Made by a program: the position numbers and the translations under genes. Under the pieces are notes generated by a model, which saw only the letters and a program-made list of their open reading frames with translations, did not search any database and was not told the DNA's origin. Positions 1,878 through 25,065 of a stretch of 64,000 bases of DNA are shown piece after piece (the stretch's first letter is position 1; the number at the start of each line of letters is the position of its first letter). Source of the stretch: Ramazzottius varieornatus (Eukaryota > Animalia > Tardigrada); assembly GCA_001949185.1 (NCBI GenBank), contig BDGG01000003.1:2835158-2899157 (forward strand), written 5' to 3'.

Positions 1878-7571
<5,694 letters not shown>

Positions 7572-8013
7572 CTTGACTCAGGTACCGGTAAAGTTGAGGA
7601 TGGGCCGGAAGTCTACAAAGAAACAAGATAAACTTCACTAATGAAATTGTATATAACTGAAAATCGAATAGAAACCTAAATCCTTACTTACATGTTGCAA
7701 AAGAAATCAGGCCACCGACTGCAGGCCTGTGGGATCCAGAAGCTTGGTTGCAAATGGGCAAAAGAATGGATCGGCGGTGGCAGAGGATGGAATCCGATGG
7801 ATCAATCCTCGTCGTTCTCGATGTCCCGTTCAAATATCAAAATGACTTCATCGATATGAAATTCGATAGCGCGCCGATGAAATCTGAACTCTGGAGGCGG
7901 TTTGTTTGTTCTGACTTATGAATTATGATCTCATTCCTCAACAGTTTCTCAAATTTCAACTAGGAGTTTGCGATATGTAGTGACATCACATACGTTACAG
8001 ACAATAATGGGGC

Positions 8014-8415: not shown

Positions 8416-11400
8416 TCAGGAGCGCAGAACACCATCGGCTTTAAACTTCGAACCGATTCGCCCGAGCAGCCAGTAAGTAGAGTCGTCTGTCTGTAAACGA
8501 ATAAGATCAACGAAATCCAGAATCACCCAGTGTTGTTGTTTCAATGACGCAGTCAAGCTGAATAATAATGGTTCTTACGGTGCTCACGAAGTCTTCCGAG
8601 TCCCTCTTCTGCAGATCGAATCCACCCAGCTTGGTCAGAAGGTCTCTGCAGGCTTTACTGACGTGAATTCTTTGCGCTGGAAAAAAACACTATGGCACTT
8701 TCGTGTAGACTTTTAACATCATCTGGTCGTCATTACCTATTCCCGTTTGCTCCATGCGAGCAGCGTGCGTGACAGTGGGTCCGAACAGAGTGTACCTTGG
8801 CATCTTGGTTCCTACGACACCGGTCAAAACAGGGCCTGAAGGAGAAACGACGTTACCAAACAAGGAACTATAATTGAGCCGGAAGTCTTGAAAGGTCATT
8901 GATCGCCTTTCATGATGACCATCATATATCTACTATAAGTTGACGCCGAACTGTTGCGTGGTTTTCGGTAGGCTTGAGTTTACGTGACGATGTTTGGTCA
9001 TTTAACTGGGATCAAATTAGATTTACGAACCGGTATGGAGACCAATCCTCAGCTTGAGACGATCAGAAGGCAAATGGACAATTTTGAATTCGTGGACCGA
9101 CCGGAGAAAGATTAGTGACAGATCGGCAATTTCTTTTGCATGCTTCAAAAAGCCGAAAAAAAGTTAAGCTTGAACCTGGCACAATGGTAGTTAAATTTCT
9201 TTTCACGAACCTTATCTCCGTTACGGTGTGGTAAGCCCGAACAAACCTGCGAAGTTAAACTACTCACGTTTGGTCTGTCCAAATTCGTATTTGAGAAATG
9301 AGACCCGGAAGCATCACGTACCATGTAAGCGTCACCTACAACAGACATGTCACGATTTAGAGGAGCTCTTCGAAAATTCCAGGCCAATGCAACCGGCCCA
9401 GAAAAGGTATATTATTTGAACAGTTACCAATGGTTTCCACTTTGTAAACATCATGTGCATCGAGTTCCTCGTCGAACTCTGAATACAGAGTATTCAGCAT
9501 TTCCACGACTTGCATCGGGGTACTTTTCGCGCTGATCTTCGTGAAACCTATCCGCGAAATCTTTCGTTAAACCTTTCTGGTAAAACCGGTACTGTATATT
9601 TCTAACAATATTTACCCACGATATCCGAAAAATAGATCTATAGAAAAAAGAACAACTTGGATAATATTGAATGACCACGAGGATATAGAGGAACCTGCTG
9701 GCACACACCGTCACAGCGTCGTAGTGCTCGGCTGAGATGGCTTCACCGCGTTTCAGAGCATCGGAGATGGATGGCGGAAGCATTCCTGTGCATCATCGAA
9801 AGATTGAAGCAAACCCGCGGTGTGGTTGTCAGTACTTCGAGAGAAAAGATACTTACGATGTAATAAACCTTCCCCCTTCTTCTTCTCTGCCGAAATTTCT
9901 GTTGTCTGGTTAGCCAGTTGTTTAGCCGAGCTCCCAATGAATTTATTTATCCGCGTTACCGACAAAACGTACCAAAGGCACAATGGCGGACACACGATTA
10001 CCGAAAATATCAACAAAGCCAGAGCTCCAGAGAACTCGGCTTCCGCTGTACTGATCTAAAAACGAGAAAAAACGTGGAGACAAACCGCAATACTATTTCG
10101 TTGTCCTGCGGGGTGATGAGCAGGGTAACGCAAATGAAATCGCGAACCTGGAGGTGAAGAGCGCCGTTTACGGTAGTGACCAGATTGCCCTCAAGAGCAC
10201 TTATTGAGTCCATGTACGTTGTCATGTTTCCAAACCATAACTAAAAATAATAAGACCGTATTGAATTATCAGAATGGTTTTCTTTGGTGGGACCAATGAT
10301 CTTCTGCACCAGCCCTCTTGCAACATCCGCGCTCTGTGGAACGTTCGCCAATATTATGGGCCTCATCCTTTCAAACAGTAGGCTGGTGAGGTTCTCCTTC
10401 CCGGTTAGGATCTTCTTGTACAGTGATCTGCTGTCCTCCGAGTGATCGAAACATATCTCGAAAAAGGTCTTCGACTTAACATACACATCTGAAAGAAACG
10501 ATTATAAATGTCCATACAGTAAGCAGGTCCAAATTTTGTGACAGTATTGAACTCGGACTGCCTTACCGAAGAACATGTCGTGTTCATCCGGGGTACTGTA
10601 TCCTTTGGAAAAATATGCGCTTCCAAGAGCCCGCTGGATTCCTGTCCGTATGGATAAATAGAACGTCAGCAAATACTTTCGCGCAGATAGTTTCCACGAG
10701 TGGCGCGTAATCTTATCGTTACTGGTCGAAAGGGTGCGCCACTTGGAAAAACGATCTGCGTGAATTCATCTGCCGATGTTTCAGTTAATTCTTTTTATCA
10801 AACTTCATATTCAGGTTCACTTTGGTCATCGCATTCTCGCTTACCAAAGGCTTCTTTCGTGTTCGTGAACAGTTCGAGCGCGAACAGGTTCTTCCATAGT
10901 TCGCCGCCAATATCCCCACTAAGTTTCACATCCCTGTTCATCAATTTCAGCGCTCCTTCGATCAAGCGAGTGTACCAGACGACCTCCTCAATCGATGTGT
11001 GGTTGGATTTTCTATCAATCCTATGACGTAGCAAGCGATTCCTGAGAATAAAGAAAAAACGACAGACGGTTAGTCAACGTTTTTCATACGGACTAGATAA
11101 CAAAGTGTAGCTCCGGGCTACCGAAAATTGGCGGATGTTGACAGCCATTCCACATCATCCGGCTTTCCGGGCCACAAGTTTACGGCCGAGATCCCTTGCT
11201 CCGTGGACGCCCGAAGCTTAATCAAATTATTCCAAGTTACATTGCTGCTGCAAACACATCGCAAAGAGTGAAAAATTGAACAAATATGGGAAAAGAGGGA
11301 AAAATTGAACAAATATCCTGCCAGATCATAAAAGACACGGACCAGTCCTTTGAGTCGTATTTACTCACTTGTTCGAACTGAGAAACAAGCTGCAACAGGA

Positions 11401-11831
11401 AGAGTGATAAATGTTTCTTGTTGAAATAAAACAACCTAGAAGTGGAACACACCTGGTCATTCCACGTTCGCGTTGCAGTCTGGTGACGACCTCGCCGACC
11501 TGAACGCTCGCAGCTACCGCTGCGGCGGTGGACTTGGCAATTTGTTTTGCGTTCAGAGCAGTATACATAATTAGTCCACACTATAAAAAAAGAAGAATCA
11601 AATTAAGGTTGCCACATGAAAAACAAAACATTCAAACGAACAAACACTTACCTGGAAAAAGAGGACTGTCATCGGCACGCAAAGGACCAACACTAATTTC
11701 AGGAAACGCTTTTTCCGGATGGATGGCGAATCCTGAACAAGTTGTAAGAACTCCCTGGCAGTGGCATGACCAACACTCAGGCTGCTTTGAGCAGTACTTT
11801 GACCACGCGGAGAAGCATGACCGCGAACCAT
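8416..11831 (-). CDS. NIT-domain transmembrane guanylyl cyclase, copy A (catalytically atypical); start codon uncertain (11831, or further upstream near 12071)
   Basis: Spliced exons give TM1 ([18 protein letters not shown]), NIT motifs [20 protein letters not shown]|IQRALG and [12 protein letters not shown]2 ([23 protein letters not shown]), a coiled coil ending LLH/MLPPSI, and a cyclase domain with [49 protein letters not shown] and TYWLL. Stop at 8416. Confidence 0.85.
10682..10760. repeat. Hairpin/MITE-like element copy in an intron of NIT-GC copy A
   Basis: CGCAGATAGTTTCCACGAGTGGCGCG ... GTGCGCCACTTGGAAAAACGATCTGCG. Confidence 0.75.
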
Positions 11832-12789
11832 CTTTGCCAAAAGCGCCTTTGGTGATACTCGTTCCTGCTTCGCGCGGTCAAGCTGTTAAGTTCTTACAAA
11901 CAGTCGGACGCGGCGGACGACCTCACGAAACTTCTGTAGACTTGTACAGTGGTACAGACGATCATTGGGATGCACGAGACTTGTCGAAGTGCGCAATGCA
12001 ATCGATGTCGTGTAGGTTCGATGCCGTTTAGGACCTCCCCACAGGACCGACCCTGTAGGCGGGAATGGCATCTGCTAATAACTCCTGGGACTCTATAGAC
12101 GCATTCATGCAGCTAATTTGGTATCGTTTAGGTTGTTTTGTAAAACCGAGCGCTGTCACCCTGAAATTCCATTGAACCCTGTAACATGCTTTTTTTCAAG
12201 TCTGTCGGCGTTCCCACTGAGAGATGTCTACGGCCGCCCATCTTCCGCATCCGCTCGGCGACATCAGGTCTGTCAAATACCCAACGAAAACGACATCTAC
12301 AAGTGGCCAAAATCTAACTTTATTGGACGACAGTGCCCATCCTGTCATCATAGCACGTTACTAAACATCAGGCCATCCGAAATTTAAAGAACAAGGTAAT
12401 TAATTGTCAAGGCGGTTATCGGCCTTGATCTTTCGTGAAGGACTCATACGGTTCCCCGCAATTTGTTAGACCTCACGGCTCTTGACGAGAACTAATGTAC
12501 ACGTGAAACCGTTAGATTCTCTTTAGACTGCCAAGAAAATCAGCTTTTCCTGACTGTTCAAACGCCAACCGACTTTCCAGTTCGGACTCCAGAGAACTGG
12601 CGGATATCGTGCTACGGAGCTCTTGACCACTTCGAGAAGGCTCAAAAGAAAACGCTTGGCGACTTCTCCTGAATACCGATTGCCGTTCCGGCGAGGCAGC
12701 CCCGATGCACCCTAAATGTGCATTGCAGGAAAGCTTTTCCAGTGTGCGAGGTTTTCCCTGAGTCTATTTTCACCATGTGATCATGAGTA

Positions 12790-14370
12790 TCGAATCTCGC
12801 GTAAAGCGAGTTCAGAAACTCGATAACCTCGAAAGAGATCGAAGGTGTTAAAGTCAATGTAATCTCGATTATAAACGGGCGGCACTTGAAATTTTTGCCT
12901 TCATTACTGCAATACCGATACCGGCGTGAACGAACAGGAGGCCGGCAGTTTCGTGAGTTCAAGTACAACATCGTTATAAGCAATCAACAGAACAATTTGC
13001 ACACAAACTTGACTTGCAGACGGATTAATGGATTAACCACTACCTGCAATATATCATATCACAATCGTAGCATTCGGCACCAGACAATGGTCAAGTACGG
13101 TTCGAATGCCCAGCTCCCGTATCGGATATAATCGACAGTAAGGACAAGGTGACATTGCCTGGTCGTCTAAACGAAGTTTGATGAGGGCAGTCAGATCCAC
13201 CTCGGTGGGCTTGATGAGGTCAGCGATCCATACAGTCACTTCGGCGAACCAACCCTGCCGGAAAACTTGAAAGCTTAAATAGTCAACCAGAATGAAACTG
13301 TGAGTTTTGCAGTAGGTTTTTACTTGGTTGGTTTTGTTGCTCGTCATGTCGGGGACGTCTGTCATGCTGGAAGAATTTCCCCAGGTCGCGTCCACGAACT
13401 TCTGGATATTTGCGATTGATTCGATTATGTTCTTGTGCAAGCTTTCTGCTCCGCACAGAGTGCAGGCATGCTGGGCGAGCAGAACCGGCGTCTGAACTTG
13501 CGCCTGTGCAACAAAGGACAGCTAATATATGCGGATCGATTCAACATTTTTATATGTCTCTGTCAGTGAAAAGGACTGATCTAGTGGGGGGATAATTATC
13601 ACAACTTCATCGAGCTTATTCTGCAGCAAAGACCAGCATAAAACGGGAGCGTGCCGGTGTCGTTTCGGAATTCCGAAACTCGCTCCCAGTCAATCAGACT
13701 ATAGGGGAAAAAATCGGCTTACCAGCGTGAATGCACTGTCCAGGCCCCAGCACCGTAACTCTTACCTCAGTGATGATAATCAACATCATGGATCCCGGAA
13801 CGAAAGAGACTGAATTTAAGTTAGCAACTTTACGAAAGGCTGAAACAGTAAGAAGGCACCTTGTCACCCCTCTTTCCTTCTGTAAACAAGTGACCAGGGT
13901 CCCAATCTCCAGTCACTTCATTATTCGTATCTGTCGCAAGGTGCTGGCTCCTGACCACCTTGGATTATGAGCCCACACTACTCGTACAGAAATACAGCAA
14001 CTAAAACTATCATAGATAAGTTTGGACCATGCAGGAACGAAGCTTACTTCAATGAAGACCACTATCGTCGATACGGCGAAGATGACCAGCAGTCGGACCA
14101 ATCTGGCACGATGGACGGCGTTGTTATCTTTGGCGAAGTGCACCGGACCAGCCGTGTTTGCCTTCCACGTCGTGACGATCAGGTCCGGCAAGTTCTTCGG
14201 TGTCGTTCGGCGAACGCTGTCCAGTCTCGAAATGGTAGCCGGCACAGCCAAAGACAGTGTGGCACCGGACTGCCCACGGTCCGAAAGGACGGAGCCATTA
14301 AGAGACAGTATATGGACGAGACTGTCGCGACGAAATTTTCGGCACAGTGTCGAATGGAACCTTGTTCTGT
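12790..14370 (-). pseudogene. Decayed, internally deleted NIT-guanylyl cyclase copy B (derived from copy C)
   Basis: [22 protein letters not shown] matches copy [23 protein letters not shown]. The NIT exon EIGTLVTCLQKERGVT is out of frame because of small deletions. Only [13 protein letters not shown] (about 12828-12790) remains of the cyclase domain. Confidence 0.75.
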
Positions 14371-15334: not shown

Positions 15335-18300
15335 TCAGCTTTCCCACTCTTGCAGCGCCAGTCGAGCTTGCCGTTCGGCTTCGTGGAGGTCCACGGAGAA
15401 CCCGATGTCTGCTGACCGGATCAACCACCATGTCACCATGCTACCTTTTCCCTGCAACGACGACGGTTCTCGTACTGCGAAATAAAGTGACCAGTATATT
15501 ACAGCCTGAAATGTCACACCTTGACTTCTATATGGCCTCTACAGTCGAACTCGAAACCTCCCAGTTCGTCCAAGGCTCGTTTACAGGAATCGCTCAAGTG
15601 GATTCTCAAAGCTACGAGCCGACAAAGACAAAGTCGGTTAGATTGCCAATCAAACGAGTTTCTTAAGAAAGCAAGAAAGCAGAAGGCCTTACGTGCGCCA
15701 TGAGATTCCATGCGGGAAGCTGTGTTGACAGTGTCTCCAAATCTATCAAAAATACGGCAAGGCCATTCAACCGCGCAGGAAACCTTATCTGTCAAACAAA
15801 CAACCCACCGATTGTGAAAAAGAGTACAAGTTATTACTTACAGACAATACCGAGGCATCTTCAGGCCAATTACACCAGCCACACAGCTTCCTTCAAAGAA
15901 AGCAGTCGAATCAGTCATTGCAACGAAAATTGGTCAGTCTTGTGCCTATGCTCACCTGTGTGCATACCGATCCGGAGTAAAAGCTTTTTATGTGGCAGGT
16001 GTGGTATCACAAAGCTCTTGACCAGTTCCAAAAGGCTCAAAGAAAGATTGGCGACCTCGCCCGAGTGCCTGTTTCCATTGCGCATCGGCAAGCCCGAAGC
16101 AACCTGGAGCAAAAATACGATGGAACCATAAAAGTATCGGTGGTACGCCGCGGTAAACGCCTTACCATGTAAGCGTCTCCTGCAAAAAGTGAAACAGGTA
16201 TCTGGATCAGATTGATTTTCAGCTTACCTGACACCGTTTGCTCAAAAGAAAGTCAACATACCGATTGTCTCGACTTTGTAGACGTCGAACCGATCGATGA
16301 TGGAATCAAACTCCGTGTAGAGAGAGTTGAGAAACTCAATAACCTTCGTGGAGGCGAGCGAATAGACATAATATTAATATCTACGGCACACAAGGACCGT
16401 AAAGGATGCGCACTTTACTCAAATCGTATTAGTACCTGCGTGGACGAGCAGGAAGCAGAAAGCTTCGTAAAATCCACAACATCGCTACGTAAACAAAACA
16501 TTGTTTTGTTAATTTCGGCGTGCGGCATGGAAATGGAAGCTGATTACCTAAAATAGATTGTGACGGAATCGTAATATTCGGCTTCAACTTGGCGGTTCTT
16601 CTTCAGTGCATCGGCGACCGAGGGTGGAAGCATCTGGTACAGAAGTCTTTCCGTGCGTTTCTTCTCAAAGTTCAGCTCGACGGTCTGCTGACCGACGTGC
16701 TCGGCGTAGTTTCCGATCAACTGGGCCATCTTGCTCACGGAGTAGACATACCAGGTACAGAGTAGCGGGCACACGACTATGATAAATATCAATATCGCGA
16801 TTGCCAGGTTGAAGTCATGACGCGCAGCAGCGGCCTATTGAATATTGCTAGATATTGACAGAACCAATTCCCTGGCGGATCTAACGTGCAAAGGACGAGC
16901 AACAATGTTGAAGGTCCTTAAACAACGATCCAGTTCAGTGCATTTGCCCAGCCTACAGGATATACCTGTTCATCCAGATGAAGCAGGATGAAGGTTGTTA
17001 AATCCAACTCGGTCGGTCCGATAACGTCGTCCATCAGGACTGTCATATTGGCGAACCAACTCTGCAAGAAAGAAAATTAATAAAATTATGAATTAGATCA
17101 AGGACATGGAAAAAGAGACGTGCTTGAGCTTTTGCCTGGTCCGTCACGTTGTTCTTTCCATTGGTCAAGTCTGTGCCATTGCCGCGGTCTACTATTAGGG
17201 AAGAGTTATCCACAGATCGGACGTTTCGGAACAGCTTCGCGGATTTCCGGATGTCAATGACCGGCTCACTGTAATGATCCAGCAGACTTTGGTACAAGTC
17301 TTTAGTTCGGGCTGAATGCAGGAACGCAGCATCGAGCAGAACGCGAGCTTGTACTTCCGCCTCTGCAATCAAACAGAACTAATATGAGAACCGAGTCATA
17401 AATCACCAGCGCGTATTTATGAAGCTGCCTGTCAGGTTGGGTATCTCCGTAGGGGACTTGCCATTGAACCATAACTGCTCTTCGGAAGTATGATATCCTC
17501 GCGCGTAGTAATTTCCTCCCAACGCACGTTGCAAACCTTCCGATGAACTCGGGTTAGAACCAGAGTATTGCCCAACAAGAACAAAGTTAAACACTTCCGG
17601 TATATGATAATACTTCGTCATCCATGAGATGGGAGACGGGCAAGGCAAACGTAAGAGATCATTCTGACGAGTCATATATTTTCTCATTGTTATTGGCTGG
17701 AGGGGTGCGCCACTCAATAATTTTACACGTTTTGTTTGCCCAGCTCCCAAATTGTACCTAAAAAGAATCTTTATTGAAAAGTCATGATTAAAAATGCTAA
17801 CCAATTGTGTCCTTGGCCTGGAGTATGAGCTCGTAAGCCACGAAATATCTCCAAAGGTCACCACCGTTGTCTCCACCCATATAGATGTCGCGGTTGACCC
17901 ATTTGATCAAGATCGTGATGGCTGCGGTGTACCAACGAAGCTCACTCAAAGATTGGGTGGTGGAGTTAATTGTCCGCCGGTAGTCCAACAGAAAATTACT
18001 ACAAACGACAAAAGTGCAAATCCAGCTTATCGACTTGCTAAGGGCGTATGTAGAACGGAAGTTATTAGAGCTATATTGGACACGTCCATTAATCTTGGCC
18101 TTGCGATTGGAGAGTACCGATCGAAAAATGAGCACTACGATACCAACCGGAAGTCTTCCCCAGTTGCGAAATGTTTGTCGTCCTGTGGTCCTCCGCGCCA
18201 TTTGGTCACGTGTTCGAACGCCAGGTCGGTGTTATTACGGAATTTCAACACTCGCTCCCAGGCAATGGGACTAGGAACAAAAGTGGACTGATAATTATAA

Positions 18301-22610: not shown

Positions 22611-22816
22611 TCCCGATGTTTAAATTATGTGTGTTGTTTTTCATATGCTTTAGTCTACAAACATTCATACCCAAAACAATTTCACCAGCAGAACGAAATG
22701 ATTATTCGAGTGTTTGGTGAAAAATGGGAAACATGATAATATTGGAGGTATTTTCTCATGCGACTATTGAAGTATAGATTCCAAGTTCGTTCAGGCACTC
22801 ACCATTCAAGTCTTTC

Positions 22817-25065
22817 TCAGTGATGATGGTTGCAACAGCCGCCGCCATGTCCATGTTGGTGGCCGTGTGACTGTTGGATGGCTGAAGGTAAACTTTGCCT
22901 CAAAGCCGTCGTCAGCGTCATCAGCATTTCCAGAGCCTTCTTGTAAACAGCCGATCCAATGCCTGTAGCGTCAGCAGTAATGTCCACTGCGTTCTTGGCT
23001 AGCAGCTCCAAGTCTTCGTACAGGCTCTTATCCCTTATACGCATTTTCAGTCCGATGTGAACTAGCTGTAGCAAGTGCGACCCTACTGCTATGTGTTTGG
23101 GTGGGTAAGCGAAGGTAGTGCCTTCTAGGGCGTTCTGACTGAAGGTAAAAGCCATCGGGAGATTGCTCATTGAGGTATAGGCCGATGAACAAAGTAAGGA
23201 CATTGTGCAAATTACAAAGTTCTTTGGATGCAGAAGACCTGCAGCGTCCCGGAGGATCGGGTCCGCTAGCTTCACCACCGTCGTGAAGTCACCGGCTGCC
23301 GCGCGAGACTGCATTTGCTTCATGGCAACTTCAGCGTGAGACATCAGGTCCTCGGCGGCTGCGACAGACTGGTCGGGGTATTTGGTTCCGCAGTGGGCGC
23401 ATTTGTAGTCACCGGGTGCTTGAGCTTTGAAAGGGACGGACTCTCCGCACTTCTTGTCGATGCACATTGCACTCTGAAGAAACGCATCCTGGAAAACAAG
23501 CAAGAAATCTTCAGAAGACTGATGCAGTGTTTTTATCGAGTTGGACAAAGACTGTCTTTCATGCGGTCACGAAGGGTTACTTGGCACGACAGTAAATTTA
23601 GCATATTTTGTACGGTCTAACTAGCCCGTGCTCGGCACCAATTTGGTAGGCGTCTTCGTAGGAAAAATGGCAAAATATACTCAGCACCCAAAACAACTGA
23701 CGAGTTTCGACGCCCGTACTTACGTGGATTAGGTCTTGGCATCCTACGCATTCACAGTGAAAGAAATACTGCTCCTTCAGGTACTGCCGACGGAGACGCG
23801 TAGGTTGATTCAGATCGGCATAGGTAACTCTGACCTATAACAAAAGCAGGATGAATATGCGAGCAGACAAGCCTTTCTCATAAAGAACAGATCAAAATGT
23901 TGGTCTCCTACATCATCTAGAGCTGCAATTTCGTCTATAGCATAGACCAGCATGTCGGGCCCGTCATAAGACTGGCAGGCATTCGGTCGGCACGAGTGGT
24001 CGAACTTTCCAGCAGACAGGAACAGTCCATGGCCGATGCACTCATTAAAGGAACCTTGGATGGAGTACGCGTTGCTCTTTATGCGACTGTAAATTTCTCC
24101 AAGGGAGTCGAACTGCAACAAGTCCGCGTAAGCTGGATCGTTGAAGAAGGAAGAAAGCGTGGTCGACGATTCAGCAACATACGTCGCGATTTCCTTATCC
24201 TCCTTTGCTTCAGACCAATCTAAAACACAGCGTAAGTATGCAAACCCGGAGAAGACGTCAAAATATCCGCAACGGACGCACTTACGAGAGGCGAGGTGGT
24301 AGAATTTGCGCTTAAAAGGGGTTTCGTTCCGCGATGAATCTTCCGAATCAAGGCCCATCTATTAAGCAAAGAATGTGTCTCACGGGATCATCACCACGGA
24401 TAAGAATACTGTGGGACGCACCTTCAGCTTGAGGACGGTTTGAGCAAGAAGGTACATGAAGCTAGACAGTTTGCCTTCTGTCCGTAGCAGACCACCGCAT
24501 TCGTGCTTGTGATTCTCCTTCCATGCTTTCTTCTGTAACAGAAACGACGTAGATATCTTTGGTATTGTAAGGCACTATGTGTCCCTGAGAGGCATATCGC
24601 AGCGTACGCTACATAGCATTCATGACTCTGCAAACCAACTCCACCACATCCTTTCTGCAAGTAGCGCACATTTACAGTGTTGGCAGCTGGAGGCATGCGC
24701 CACTTGAGAAAACGATCCGGCGGAGTTGGTTTGACGAGCACCCGATAGATACCTGCAAGTTTCAACCCCCTGTGCTACCCTCTTGAACTCACCTGACATT
24801 CCGGAGAGCAATAACAAGCTATCTTGCACTTGGCACAGCGTTTCGCTGAGGGATCACTGCGAAGCAGGAGCACATACTCAAAAGTCAGCGATGACGTGTA
24901 GAATGCAACGGAGAAATTACTACGGTATGGAAACGTTCGCATTCCGTGGGTGCTAACTTACAAAGCAAAGCAGTACTCGCAGAACTGTCCGCGACGGGAT
25001 CCTTCCAGGACGTAAGAGAAGGGATGGTTCTTAAGGATGCGATCACCGAGTTGGTAACGAGGCAT
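22817..25065 (-). CDS. SMYD-family (SET + MYND) lysine methyltransferase
   Basis: Exon 1 reads MPRYQLGDRILKNHPFSYVLEGSRRGQFCEYCF. MYND motifs RCAKCKIACYCSPECQ and AWKENHKHEC; SET motifs IKSNAYSI and GLFLSAGKFDHSCRPN; post-SET QYFFHCECVGC; TPR-like C-terminal helices. Confidence 0.88.
24650..24720. repeat. Hairpin element copy in a SMYD intron
   Basis: CAAGTAGCGCAC ... ATGCGCCACTTGAGAAAACGATC. Confidence 0.65.

What the first reader, a model, noticed from the sequence alone, without database searches (positions are those of the whole stretch)
8416..9790. Copy A keeps only the alpha/C1-side catalytic residues: predicted obligate heterodimer with copy C
Seen: copy A retains both metal-binding Asp (FSDIV, IGDAY) and the Arg of RIGLH. 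It reads [17 protein letters not shown] where copy C has the canonical [17 protein letters not shown], and RDSEDF|TDDSTYWL where copy C has RGHIEVK|[10 protein letters not shown]. Known: in class III cyclases the Asp pair comes from one subunit (sGC alpha/AC C1), while the guanine-selecting Cys, the transition-state Asn and the KGK Lys come from the other (beta/C2); sGC alpha also has Thr at the Asn position. Inference: the losses fall on one face only while the cyclase frame and splice sites are intact. Copy A should therefore be inactive as a homodimer but able to complete one active site with its neighbour C, or act as a dominant-negative. This would be an independent re-evolution of alpha/beta asymmetry in a NIT receptor cyclase.
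Basis: partly seen in the sequence, partly recalled or inferred. Interest (0 to 1): 0.85.

Follow-up and report, generated by a model that had tools for sequence, protein, structure and literature searches.

The report
Half-site NIT guanylyl cyclase subunit, tardigrade
This expressed, conserved tardigrade membrane guanylyl cyclase has kept only one of the two halves of its catalytic site, as the alpha subunit of soluble guanylyl cyclase has, so it probably makes cGMP only when paired with an intact relative; the principle is known, but not in this receptor family.

Summary
Copy A (Ramazzottius varieornatus RvY_07447) is an 18-exon, 616-aa minus-strand gene. Every junction is GT..AG, and spliced transcript contigs from four studies cover it. 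It keeps both metal Asp, the Arg of RIGLH and the Glu of VETIGD. It has lost the Cys (Thr), the Asn (Thr) and the KGKG hairpin (VSTT). One correction: the real donor lies 9 nt downstream, so the protein reads ...SEDFVST|TDDSTYWL.

This is not decay.
- Five coding differences out of six in a second strain are synonymous.
- Four relatives share the pattern: a paralogue on another contig, two Paramacrobiotus proteins and one Hypsibius protein. All keep the alpha-face residues and lack the Asn.
- Together they form a clade with 99% support.
- Outside the two beta-face segments, A-type proteins are as conserved between genera as the intact C type (68-70% against 66%). Inside them they are relaxed (40-45% against 88%).
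- Human sGC alpha-1 shows the same pattern.

A half-site subunit that needs an intact partner is the best reading (0.6). That the partner is neighbour C is only inferred. Independent origin within NIT cyclases is unresolved. Obligate heterodimeric receptor cyclases are already known (ODR-1/DAF-11), and half-site cyclases are common in this genome. It is a new member of a known kind.

The parts
8416..11926 (-). Copy A gene (RvY_07447). 18 exons, ATG at 11831, stop at 8416-8418, 616 aa. Layout: short N-terminus, TM, NIT domain, TM, signalling helix, cyclase domain.
   Evidence: Spliced contigs and joints; model and ORF; P0045 = RvY_07447-2 matches the N-terminal exons; Pfam hits exon by exon.
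9616..9637 (-). 22-nt microexon that encodes IYFSDIV(G) and carries the first metal-binding Asp (alpha/C1 face).
   Evidence: joints 9547->9616 and 9637->9709 in three runs.
9322..9335 (-). 14-nt microexon that encodes (G)DAYM and carries the second metal-binding Asp (alpha/C1 face).
   Evidence: the exon's letters lie between joints in run X7 and in a loose end of run X5 (tables 5c and 7).
9031..9142 (-). Exon ending in RIGLHT, with the triphosphate-positioning Arg of the alpha/C1 face kept.
   Evidence: joints; role of the Arg from Winger 2008.
8737..8835 (-). Exon with the degenerate helix-alpha4 motif [17 protein letters not shown]: Cys->Thr, Asp->Pro, Asn->Thr, Ser->Ala, Arg kept.
   Evidence: alignment to GC-C, GC-A and CYG12; PF00211 positions 110-140.
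8579..8676 (-). Penultimate exon. It ends ...RDSEDFVST. The donor used in RNA is at 8579.
   Evidence: Joint 8490->8579 in all four runs.
8416..8490 (-). Last coding exon, TDDSTYWLL...stop. With the preceding VST it replaces the KGKG hairpin (Lys of the beta/C2 face lost).
   Evidence: gapless alignment to copy C.
15335..16834 (-). Copy C, second TM plus signalling helix plus cyclase domain (9 exons). All catalytic residues are canonical (pattern DEDRCDNRKGKG). Candidate partner.
   Evidence: Splice sites are inferred from GT..AG and homology; they were not checked against RNA.
12598..14305 (-). Copy B, a decayed C-type copy between A and C. VETIGDAY has become SHTGKAF, the C-terminal half of the cyclase domain is missing, and no spliced contigs cover it.

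Best explanation
Copy A is a working, conserved subunit of a NIT-domain membrane guanylyl cyclase whose catalytic domain has become alpha/C1-like. It still supplies the two metal-binding Asp and the triphosphate Arg. It no longer supplies the ribose-orienting Asn, the hairpin Lys or the guanine-selecting Cys. Class III cyclase sites form across a head-to-tail dimer, so an A:A dimer would have two crippled sites. A dimer of A with a subunit that has an intact beta face would have one complete site (A's Asp/Asp/Arg plus the partner's Glu/Cys/Asn/Arg/Lys) and one dead pseudo-site, as in sGC alpha/beta and adenylyl cyclase C1/C2.

Shown here: residue pattern, expression, splicing, selection, and conservation of the pattern across a tardigrade clade.

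Inferred: heterodimerisation, inactivity of A alone, and the identity of the partner. Neighbour C is the nearest candidate; I put it at about 0.4 given that a heterodimer forms.
For: 1. Residue pattern confirmed.
2. Face assignment from the CYG12 structure paper: Asp482(A), Asp527(A) and Arg571(A) against Asn599(B), Arg603(B), Lys640(B) and Cys592(B).
3. Human sGC alpha-1 keeps FSDIVGFT, VETIGDAY and RIGLHSG and reads FGNNVTLANKFE, the same pattern.
4. Transcribed and correctly spliced in four studies. One run carries a cDNA-cloning adapter, and introns are removed exactly at GT..AG.
5. Against a second strain, 5 synonymous and 1 non-synonymous change in the CDS, while the UTRs and introns carry many more per base. 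With 431 synonymous and 1417 non-synonymous sites, the chance of at least 5 of 6 synonymous is about 0.003 (my arithmetic).
6. Five A-type proteins (RvA, RvA2 on contig C11, Paramacrobiotus P0002 and P0014, Hypsibius P0015) form one clade with SH-aLRT 99 when the catalytic columns are removed. All keep Asp1 wherever the model covers it, and Glu, Asp2 and Arg. None has the Asn (T, T, A, V, R), and the beta Arg is mostly lost (R, H, T, Q, W).
7. Of 69 near-invariant columns, 47 are fully kept. The 8 lost in all members all lie in the two beta-face segments.
8. Between genera, A-type identity is 68-70% outside those segments and 40-45% inside. C-type identity is 66% outside and 87.5% inside.
9. 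The pseudogene copy B lost alpha-face motifs too and has no spliced transcripts. This shows what decay looks like at this locus.
10. Modelled dimer of the Paramacrobiotus A-type and C-type cyclase domains: score 0.71 against a best control of 0.40. This mark was reached by 51 of 78 solved complexes and 2 of 108 mismatched pairs. The runs share at least 88% of contacts and the partner's pLDDT is 87.
Against: - No biochemical or co-expression data exist.
- Copy C has every catalytic residue and needs no partner, so the pairing is one-sided and not forced.
- RvA keeps the beta Arg and the Glu, so weak homodimer activity is not excluded.
- A-type and C-type genes are on different contigs in Paramacrobiotus, so adjacency is not a conserved feature.
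- The complex prediction passes for close relatives of a true partner and may come from memory of solved cyclase dimers. It says nothing on A:C against A:A or C:C.
- The selection test rests on six differences.
- The orthologue models are imperfect: P0002 lacks the microexon with Asp1, and P0015 is truncated.
Confidence: 0.6

Rival explanations
1. Pseudo-cyclase. A-type proteins form homodimers that bind nucleotide and metal through the retained Asp/Asp/Arg but do not cyclise. They would act as ligand-binding receptors, scaffolds or sinks, or would titrate intact subunits (dominant-negative modulators).
For: The beta-face residues have been lost for a long time. The NIT domain keeps both conserved Arg motifs (sequence), so ligand sensing is probably retained. 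Intact partners do not need A.
Against: Strict retention of the metal Asp pair and the triphosphate Arg in all five proteins is most simply explained by use in catalysis, given the relaxation elsewhere. The dominant-negative variant still requires heterodimers, so it overlaps the best explanation.
Confidence: 0.2
2. Low-activity or re-tuned homodimer. A:A still makes some cGMP, or another cyclic nucleotide, because Arg and Glu are kept and other residues compensate for the Asn and Lys.
For: RvA keeps ARME and VETIGD. All A-type proteins share a clade-specific Gln (MEQ in place of MES), which could be compensatory.
Against: The other four A-type proteins have lost the Arg as well, each to a different residue (H, T, Q, W). 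The Asn position is also hypervariable (T, T, A, V, R). That looks like release from constraint, not a new conserved solution. The Lys hairpin varies in length.
Confidence: 0.12
3. Decaying paralogue or pseudogene in a tandem cluster.
For: The neighbouring copy B is a pseudogene. Some contigs retain introns, and the annotated isoform RvY_07447-2 is truncated.
Against: Intact 616-aa ORF with 17 canonical introns. Spliced transcripts in four studies. A 5:1 synonymous excess. Conservation across three genera equal to that of the intact type outside the beta face.
Confidence: 0.03

Closest known systems
Soluble guanylyl cyclase alpha subunit (for example human GUCY1A1, PDB 6jt0 chain A)
   Same: It keeps both metal Asp, the Arg of RIGLH and VETIGDAY. 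It has Thr at the Asn position, has lost the transition-state Arg and lacks the KGK hairpin. It works only in a dimer with a subunit that supplies the other face.
   Different: Copy A is not an sGC alpha by descent. It is a two-TM NIT-domain receptor with no H-NOX or PAS region and nests among NIT cyclases. The sGC partner (beta) has lost an Asp, so the pair is mutually dependent. Here the candidate partner is fully intact.
C. elegans ODR-1/DAF-11 receptor guanylyl cyclase heterodimer
   Same: These are membrane receptor cyclases in which each monomer supplies essential residues to a single catalytic site. They are reported as an obligate heterodimer (PMC5225109).
   Different: They have a single TM, a kinase-homology domain and an ANF-type ectodomain, not a NIT domain. 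Their degeneracy is complementary on both partners. They belong to a nematode lineage.
NIT-domain guanylyl cyclases (Moroz et al. 2020; Platynereis NIT-GC1 and NIT-GC2)
   Same: Same architecture and family (PF08376 plus PF00211). NIT-GC1 makes cGMP in response to an NO donor and needs its NIT domain to do so.
   Different: The papers held here do not mention catalytic asymmetry, heterodimers or tardigrade members. NIT-GC1 is active when expressed alone.
Mammalian membrane adenylyl cyclase C1 domain
   Same: It supplies the Asp pair and an Arg. At the helix-alpha4 motif it has Thr and Asn/His in place of Asn and Arg. The tardigrade's own C1-type exon reads the same way (locus L008).
   Different: C1 and C2 are fused in one polypeptide, and the enzyme uses ATP.

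Membership tests
Class III nucleotidyl cyclase catalytic domain (PF00211) | Significant match to the family profile | tested here: met
   Exon-level hits of 41.0 and 37.1 bits against a cut-off of 21.9, plus a weaker exon at 15.5 bits. PDB hits to GC-C, GC-A and CYG12.
Class III nucleotidyl cyclase catalytic domain (PF00211) | Full set of catalytic residues for a homodimeric site (Asp, Asp, Arg, Asn, Arg, Lys) | tested here: not met
   Asn->Thr and KGKG->VSTT; the Asp pair and both Arg are kept.
NIT-domain guanylyl cyclases (NIT-GC) | NIT domain (PF08376) between two TM segments, followed by a cyclase domain and no kinase-homology domain | tested here: met
   A single exon gives only 19.2 bits, below the cut-off of 24.9. 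The database protein P0045, which is A's N-terminal half, and the orthologues P0002 and P0014 carry PF08376 in the precomputed annotation. Hydrophobic segments flank the domain in the model.
NIT-domain guanylyl cyclases (NIT-GC) | Groups with NIT-GCs in sequence searches and trees | tested here: met
   All 120 best hits of orthologue P0002 are NIT-plus-cyclase proteins; tree.
Alpha/C1-type half-site subunit of a heterodimeric class III cyclase (functional class) | Keeps the metal Asp pair and the triphosphate Arg | tested here: met
   Invariant in all five A-type proteins wherever the model covers the position.
Alpha/C1-type half-site subunit of a heterodimeric class III cyclase (functional class) | Lacks Asn, Arg and Lys of the opposite face, with those positions released from constraint | tested here: met
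   Asn is lost in 5 of 5, Arg in 4 of 5 and the hairpin Lys in all. The 8 universally lost columns all lie in these segments. Identity there is 40-45%, against 88% in the intact type. RvA itself still has the Arg.
Alpha/C1-type half-site subunit of a heterodimeric class III cyclase (functional class) | Maintained by selection (not a pseudogene) | tested here: met
   Spliced transcripts, intact ORF, 5 synonymous to 1 non-synonymous difference, conservation between genera. dN/dS on orthologues was not computed because their DNA could not be fetched.
Alpha/C1-type half-site subunit of a heterodimeric class III cyclase (functional class) | Physically pairs with a subunit that has an intact beta face, and is inactive alone | not testable with these tools
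   There is only an in-silico pass for the Paramacrobiotus pair: 0.71 against a best control of 0.40, a mark reached by 51 of 78 solved complexes and 2 of 108 mismatches. It does not distinguish family members.
Soluble guanylyl cyclase alpha subunit (by descent) | H-NOX-like and PAS N-terminal region, no TM, and grouping with sGC alpha | tested here: not met
   The architecture is TM-NIT-TM. A nests among NIT-GCs. The resemblance to sGC alpha is convergent.

The most novel reading that the evidence does not exclude
A-type proteins are a dedicated 'alpha' subunit class of NIT receptor cyclases. They pair with intact NIT cyclases to make receptors with two different NIT sensor domains, one catalytic site and one allosteric pseudo-site. 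This division of labour would be old and widespread rather than a tardigrade oddity. A 23-member lophotrochozoan NIT-GC clade also shows beta-face changes. Nemerteans even have NIT proteins with an sGC-beta-like Asp-to-Gly change alongside alpha-like ones, which would make true complementary pairs.
Probability: 0.2. Interest if true: 0.7.

Novelty: new member of a known kind. Interest (0 to 1): 0.5.

Why it matters
NIT-domain cyclases were recognised in animals only in 2020. Their first functional study treated them as self-sufficient enzymes. If a conserved subclass can work only in heterodimers, expression of single NIT cyclases in cell assays will miss or misread their function. Co-expressed pairs, as in Platynereis photoreceptors, should then be tested together. 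It would also be another independent case of a symmetric class III cyclase dimer evolving into a one-site, one-pseudo-site enzyme. It comes with a simple test by complementation. The principle itself is textbook (sGC, adenylyl cyclase, ODR-1/DAF-11). Half-site cyclases turn out to be common in this genome, so the surprise is moderate.

Tried and rejected
- **Pseudogene reading.** Rejected.
Replaced by the RNA-supported donor at 8579.
- **Full-length R. varieornatus proteins for A and C.** Only a truncated isoform of A (P0045) and an N-terminal fragment of C (P0013) are in the databases. The structure job and profile work therefore used Paramacrobiotus orthologues.
- **The look-up of encoding contigs.** Synteny in Hypsibius and Paramacrobiotus and dN/dS on orthologous coding sequences could not be done.
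- I replaced it with coordinates.
- **Single origin with the lophotrochozoan clade.** The AU test neither supports nor rejects it (p-AU 0.32).
- **Complex prediction.** It passed but cannot discriminate A:C from A:A or C:C. I give it little weight.
- **Co-expression of A and C.** Not testable, because the single read-laying run went to A plus B.
- **Literature.** No paper in the held library mentions NIT-GC heterodimers, half-sites or tardigrade NIT cyclases.
- **Joined model.** The spliced model of A was never sent to a search tool. Database searches used single exons by reference.
Full report
**What and where.** The window is contig C3:2835158-2899157 of a 55.8-Mb, 200-contig assembly. Database proteins identical to its exons are named Ramazzottius varieornatus, a tardigrade (P0045 = RvY_07447-2). 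The finding lies in the 3' half of a minus-strand, intron-rich gene.

**Checking the observation.**
- A six-frame motif scan finds FSDIV (9617-9631), GDAY (9325-9336), RIGLH (9035-9049) and RYTLFG...HAARME (8750-8797) in copy A. It finds the canonical [12 protein letters not shown] (15706-15741) and GKGSM (15437-15451) in copy C.
- I built the exon model by hand and then tested it against public reads.
- Contigs from four runs of four studies lie on the gene with introns removed exactly at GT..AG. More than fifteen joints are listed. They include the two microexons that carry the catalytic Asp residues (22 nt at 9637-9616, 14 nt at 9335-9322). One 1023-nt contig spans 8303 to 10030 in spliced form.
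- The tool labels these runs RNA only as a guess. However, exact intron removal cannot come from genomic DNA, and run X1 carries a cDNA-cloning adapter at a transcript end.
- The full model has 18 exons and a 616-aa ORF from the ATG at 11831 to the stop at 8416.
The protein reads ...SEDFVST|TDDSTYWLL, and KGKG of copy C aligns without a gap to VSTT.
- Alignment to solved GC-C, GC-A and CYG12 chains confirms which residue of A lies under the Cys, the Asp of FGD, the Asn and the Ser.
- Copy C's cyclase half (15335-16834) has every catalytic residue and canonical splice sites. C's junctions were not checked against RNA.
- The joined model of A was used only in local scripts (alignment, tree, tblastn on fetched loci). 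Database searches used single exons by reference.

**Which residues belong to which face.** In the CYG12 guanylyl cyclase structure paper (PMC2576301), the residues are assigned as follows.
- One monomer supplies the two metal Asp and the triphosphate Arg.
- The other monomer supplies the ribose-orienting Asn, the transition-state Arg (both in helix alpha4), the Lys of the beta7-beta8 loop and the base-recognising Cys.

An HMMER alignment of the A-type protein P0014 to human sGC alpha-1 (6jt0_A) shows that alpha-1 keeps FSDIVGFT, VETIGDAY and RIGLHSG and reads FGNNVTLANKFE. That is Thr at the Asn position and Lys at the Arg position. The comparison with sGC alpha is thus verified, not merely recalled.

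**Is it decay?** No, for four reasons.
1. *Expression and ORF.* See above.
2. *Polymorphism.* Runs X6 and X7 come from a slightly different strain. Within the CDS they differ at six places, five synonymous and one H506Y. The short UTR and intron stretches they cover carry ten differences. With 431 synonymous and 1417 non-synonymous sites, five or more synonymous out of six has a probability of about 0.003 under neutrality (my arithmetic).
3. *Relatives.*
   - An exon of the NIT domain, searched against 1.8 billion representative proteins, found a 598-aa Paramacrobiotus metropolitanus protein (P0002).
   - A search with P0002 found a second Paramacrobiotus protein (P0014) and a partial Hypsibius exemplaris protein (P0015).
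   - A search of the window's own genome found a paralogue, A2, on contig C11.
   - All five keep Asp1 (where the model covers it), Glu, Asp2 and the alpha Arg.
   - At the Asn position they have T, T, A, V, R. At the beta Arg they have R, H, T, Q, W. None has KGKG, and the Cys is kept in three.
   - With the catalytic columns removed, the five form one clade (SH-aLRT 99). Copy C and the Paramacrobiotus protein P0016 form another, fully canonical clade (99).
4. *An unbiased scan.* Of 69 columns that are at least 93% invariant in 77 canonical NIT cyclases, the A clade keeps 47 completely. It has lost 8 in every member. All 8 lie in the two segments [11 protein letters not shown] and R-G...K-G-K-G-x-M. 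These two segments hold 21 of the 69 columns. All 8 falling there by chance has a probability of about 2e-5, but the segments were delimited after seeing the data, so the figure is only indicative.

Between Ramazzottius and Paramacrobiotus, the identities are:

| Type | Outside the two segments | Inside the two segments |
|---|---|---|
| A type | 68-70% | 40-45% |
| C type | 66% | 87.5% |

 This is the signature of a domain kept under normal constraint, with one face released long ago, before these genera split.

The cluster supplies its own negative control. Copy B (about 12598-14305) is a C-type copy. Its VETIGDAY has become SHTGKAF, it lacks the C-terminal half of the cyclase domain, and it has no spliced contigs.

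**How it most likely works.** Class III cyclase sites form across a head-to-tail dimer. An A:A dimer would lack the Asn and the Lys in both sites. A dimer with a subunit that has an intact beta face would have one complete site and one pseudo-site, as in sGC and adenylyl cyclase. Strict retention of Asp, Asp and Arg in all A-type proteins is the main argument that they are still used in catalysis, and hence that such a partner exists. The NIT domain of A keeps both conserved Arg motifs (LQRERG and IQRALG), so A probably still senses a ligand.

- *Shown:* pattern, expression, selection and conservation.
- *Inferred:* dimer partner, inactivity alone, and any regulatory role of the pseudo-site.

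**The partner.**
- Neighbour C has the same architecture, the same strand and lies 3.4 kb upstream, with pseudogene B in between. It is the obvious candidate.
- C is complete and could work alone.
- Its closest relatives are arthropod NIT cyclases such as Drosophila CG33958.
- In Paramacrobiotus the two A-type genes share one contig, while the C-type gene is on another.
- Two further intact NIT cyclases exist in this genome (loci L002 and L003).
- A modelled dimer of the Paramacrobiotus A-type and C-type signalling-helix plus cyclase regions scored 0.71 against a best control of 0.40. This mark was reached by 51 of 78 solved complexes and 2 of 108 mismatched pairs. Contact agreement was at least 88% and the partner's pLDDT was 87.
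- By the tool's own caveats, this may reflect memory of solved cyclase dimers and passes for close relatives of a true partner. It shows compatibility, not choice of partner.

**Comparison with what is known.**
- Receptor guanylyl cyclases with split catalytic sites are already described. ODR-1/DAF-11 of C. elegans is reported as an obligate heterodimer in which each monomer supplies essential residues (PMC5225109).
- NIT cyclases were described by Moroz et al. 2020. Platynereis NIT-GC1 is active alone in an NO-donor assay.
- None of the papers held here mentions catalytic asymmetry, heterodimers or tardigrade members.
- Within the NIT family the phenomenon is not confined to tardigrades. A well-supported lophotrochozoan clade of 23 proteins shows Asn to S/T/H/R in many members, Arg to Lys, and KGKG to KFKG. 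Single nemertean and annelid proteins do too.
- An AU test does not reject uniting that clade with the tardigrade A clade (p-AU 0.32). 'Independent re-evolution' is therefore secure relative to sGC but open within NIT cyclases.
- Within this genome, about nine or ten of 40 sampled cyclase exons, tmAC C1 domains aside, have a degenerate Asn and/or Arg. One 258 kb beyond the window reads FGETVTIANKME (L040).
- Earlier first-stage notes on this genome point to the same kind of half-site cyclase elsewhere.

**Verdict.** Copy A is a real, conserved, one-face cyclase subunit, best read as an alpha-like partner subunit (0.6). The choice of C as partner and the word 'obligate' remain untested. It is a new member of a known kind and of moderate interest.

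Noticed in passing
window 12598-14305 (minus strand): Copy B is a decayed C-type NIT cyclase between A and C. Its N-terminal exon is disrupted, VETIGDAY has become SHTGKAF, there is no RIGxH, FGDTVN or KGKG part, and no spliced contigs cover it. A low-depth unspliced contig lies at 13415-13633 in one run.
   Followed up: partly
window 9616-9637, 9322-9335, 11369-11389: The gene has three microexons of 22, 14 and 21 nt, all seen in transcripts. The first two carry the two metal-binding Asp. Gene predictors miss them: Paramacrobiotus model P0002 lacks the IYFSDIVG piece, and the annotated RvY_07447-2 is a truncated intron-retaining isoform.
   Followed up: partly
window 10728-10758 and 13100-13299: Runs X6 and X7 show high-depth pieces (18-26x, against 3-8x for the gene) with long loose ends on both sides. 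One lies inside intron 5 of A and one inside copy B. They look like short segments shared with abundant transcripts from elsewhere (a repeat or mobile-element fragment).
   Followed up: no
G000:C11 about 1404757-1407450 (locus L001, minus strand): A second A-type NIT cyclase (A2). It keeps Asp (CLDIAGFT), VETIGDAY and RIGFH, but reads RYSLVGETMTYAQHME (Cys->Ser, Asn->Thr, Arg->His) and has no KGKG. It has no microexons. Its expression was not checked.
   Followed up: partly
proteins P0047, P0080 and P0043 (Tubulanus polymorphus), P0070 (Lineus longissimus): Two nemertean NIT-domain proteins have the sGC-beta-type FSGIVGF (first Asp replaced by Gly) with an intact beta face. P0043 from the same species is alpha-like (Asn->Thr, Arg->Lys, no KGKG). 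Together they could be a truly complementary alpha/beta pair inside the NIT family.
   Followed up: no
G000:C3:3157530-3157830 (locus L040) and other loci L014, L020, L025, L032, L033, L038, L041: Many cyclase exons of this genome have a degenerate helix-alpha4 motif. L040 reads FGETVTIANKME with no KGKG, as in sGC alpha. Half-site receptor cyclases seem to be a general feature of the expanded tardigrade family.
   Followed up: partly
window about 3550-7580 (minus) and 22800-24360 (minus): Long ORF pieces of an ABCC/MRP-type ABC transporter lie downstream of copy A. Pieces with SET and MYND zinc-finger features (SMYD-like) lie upstream of copy C. Both were identified only by eye from the translations.
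   Followed up: no
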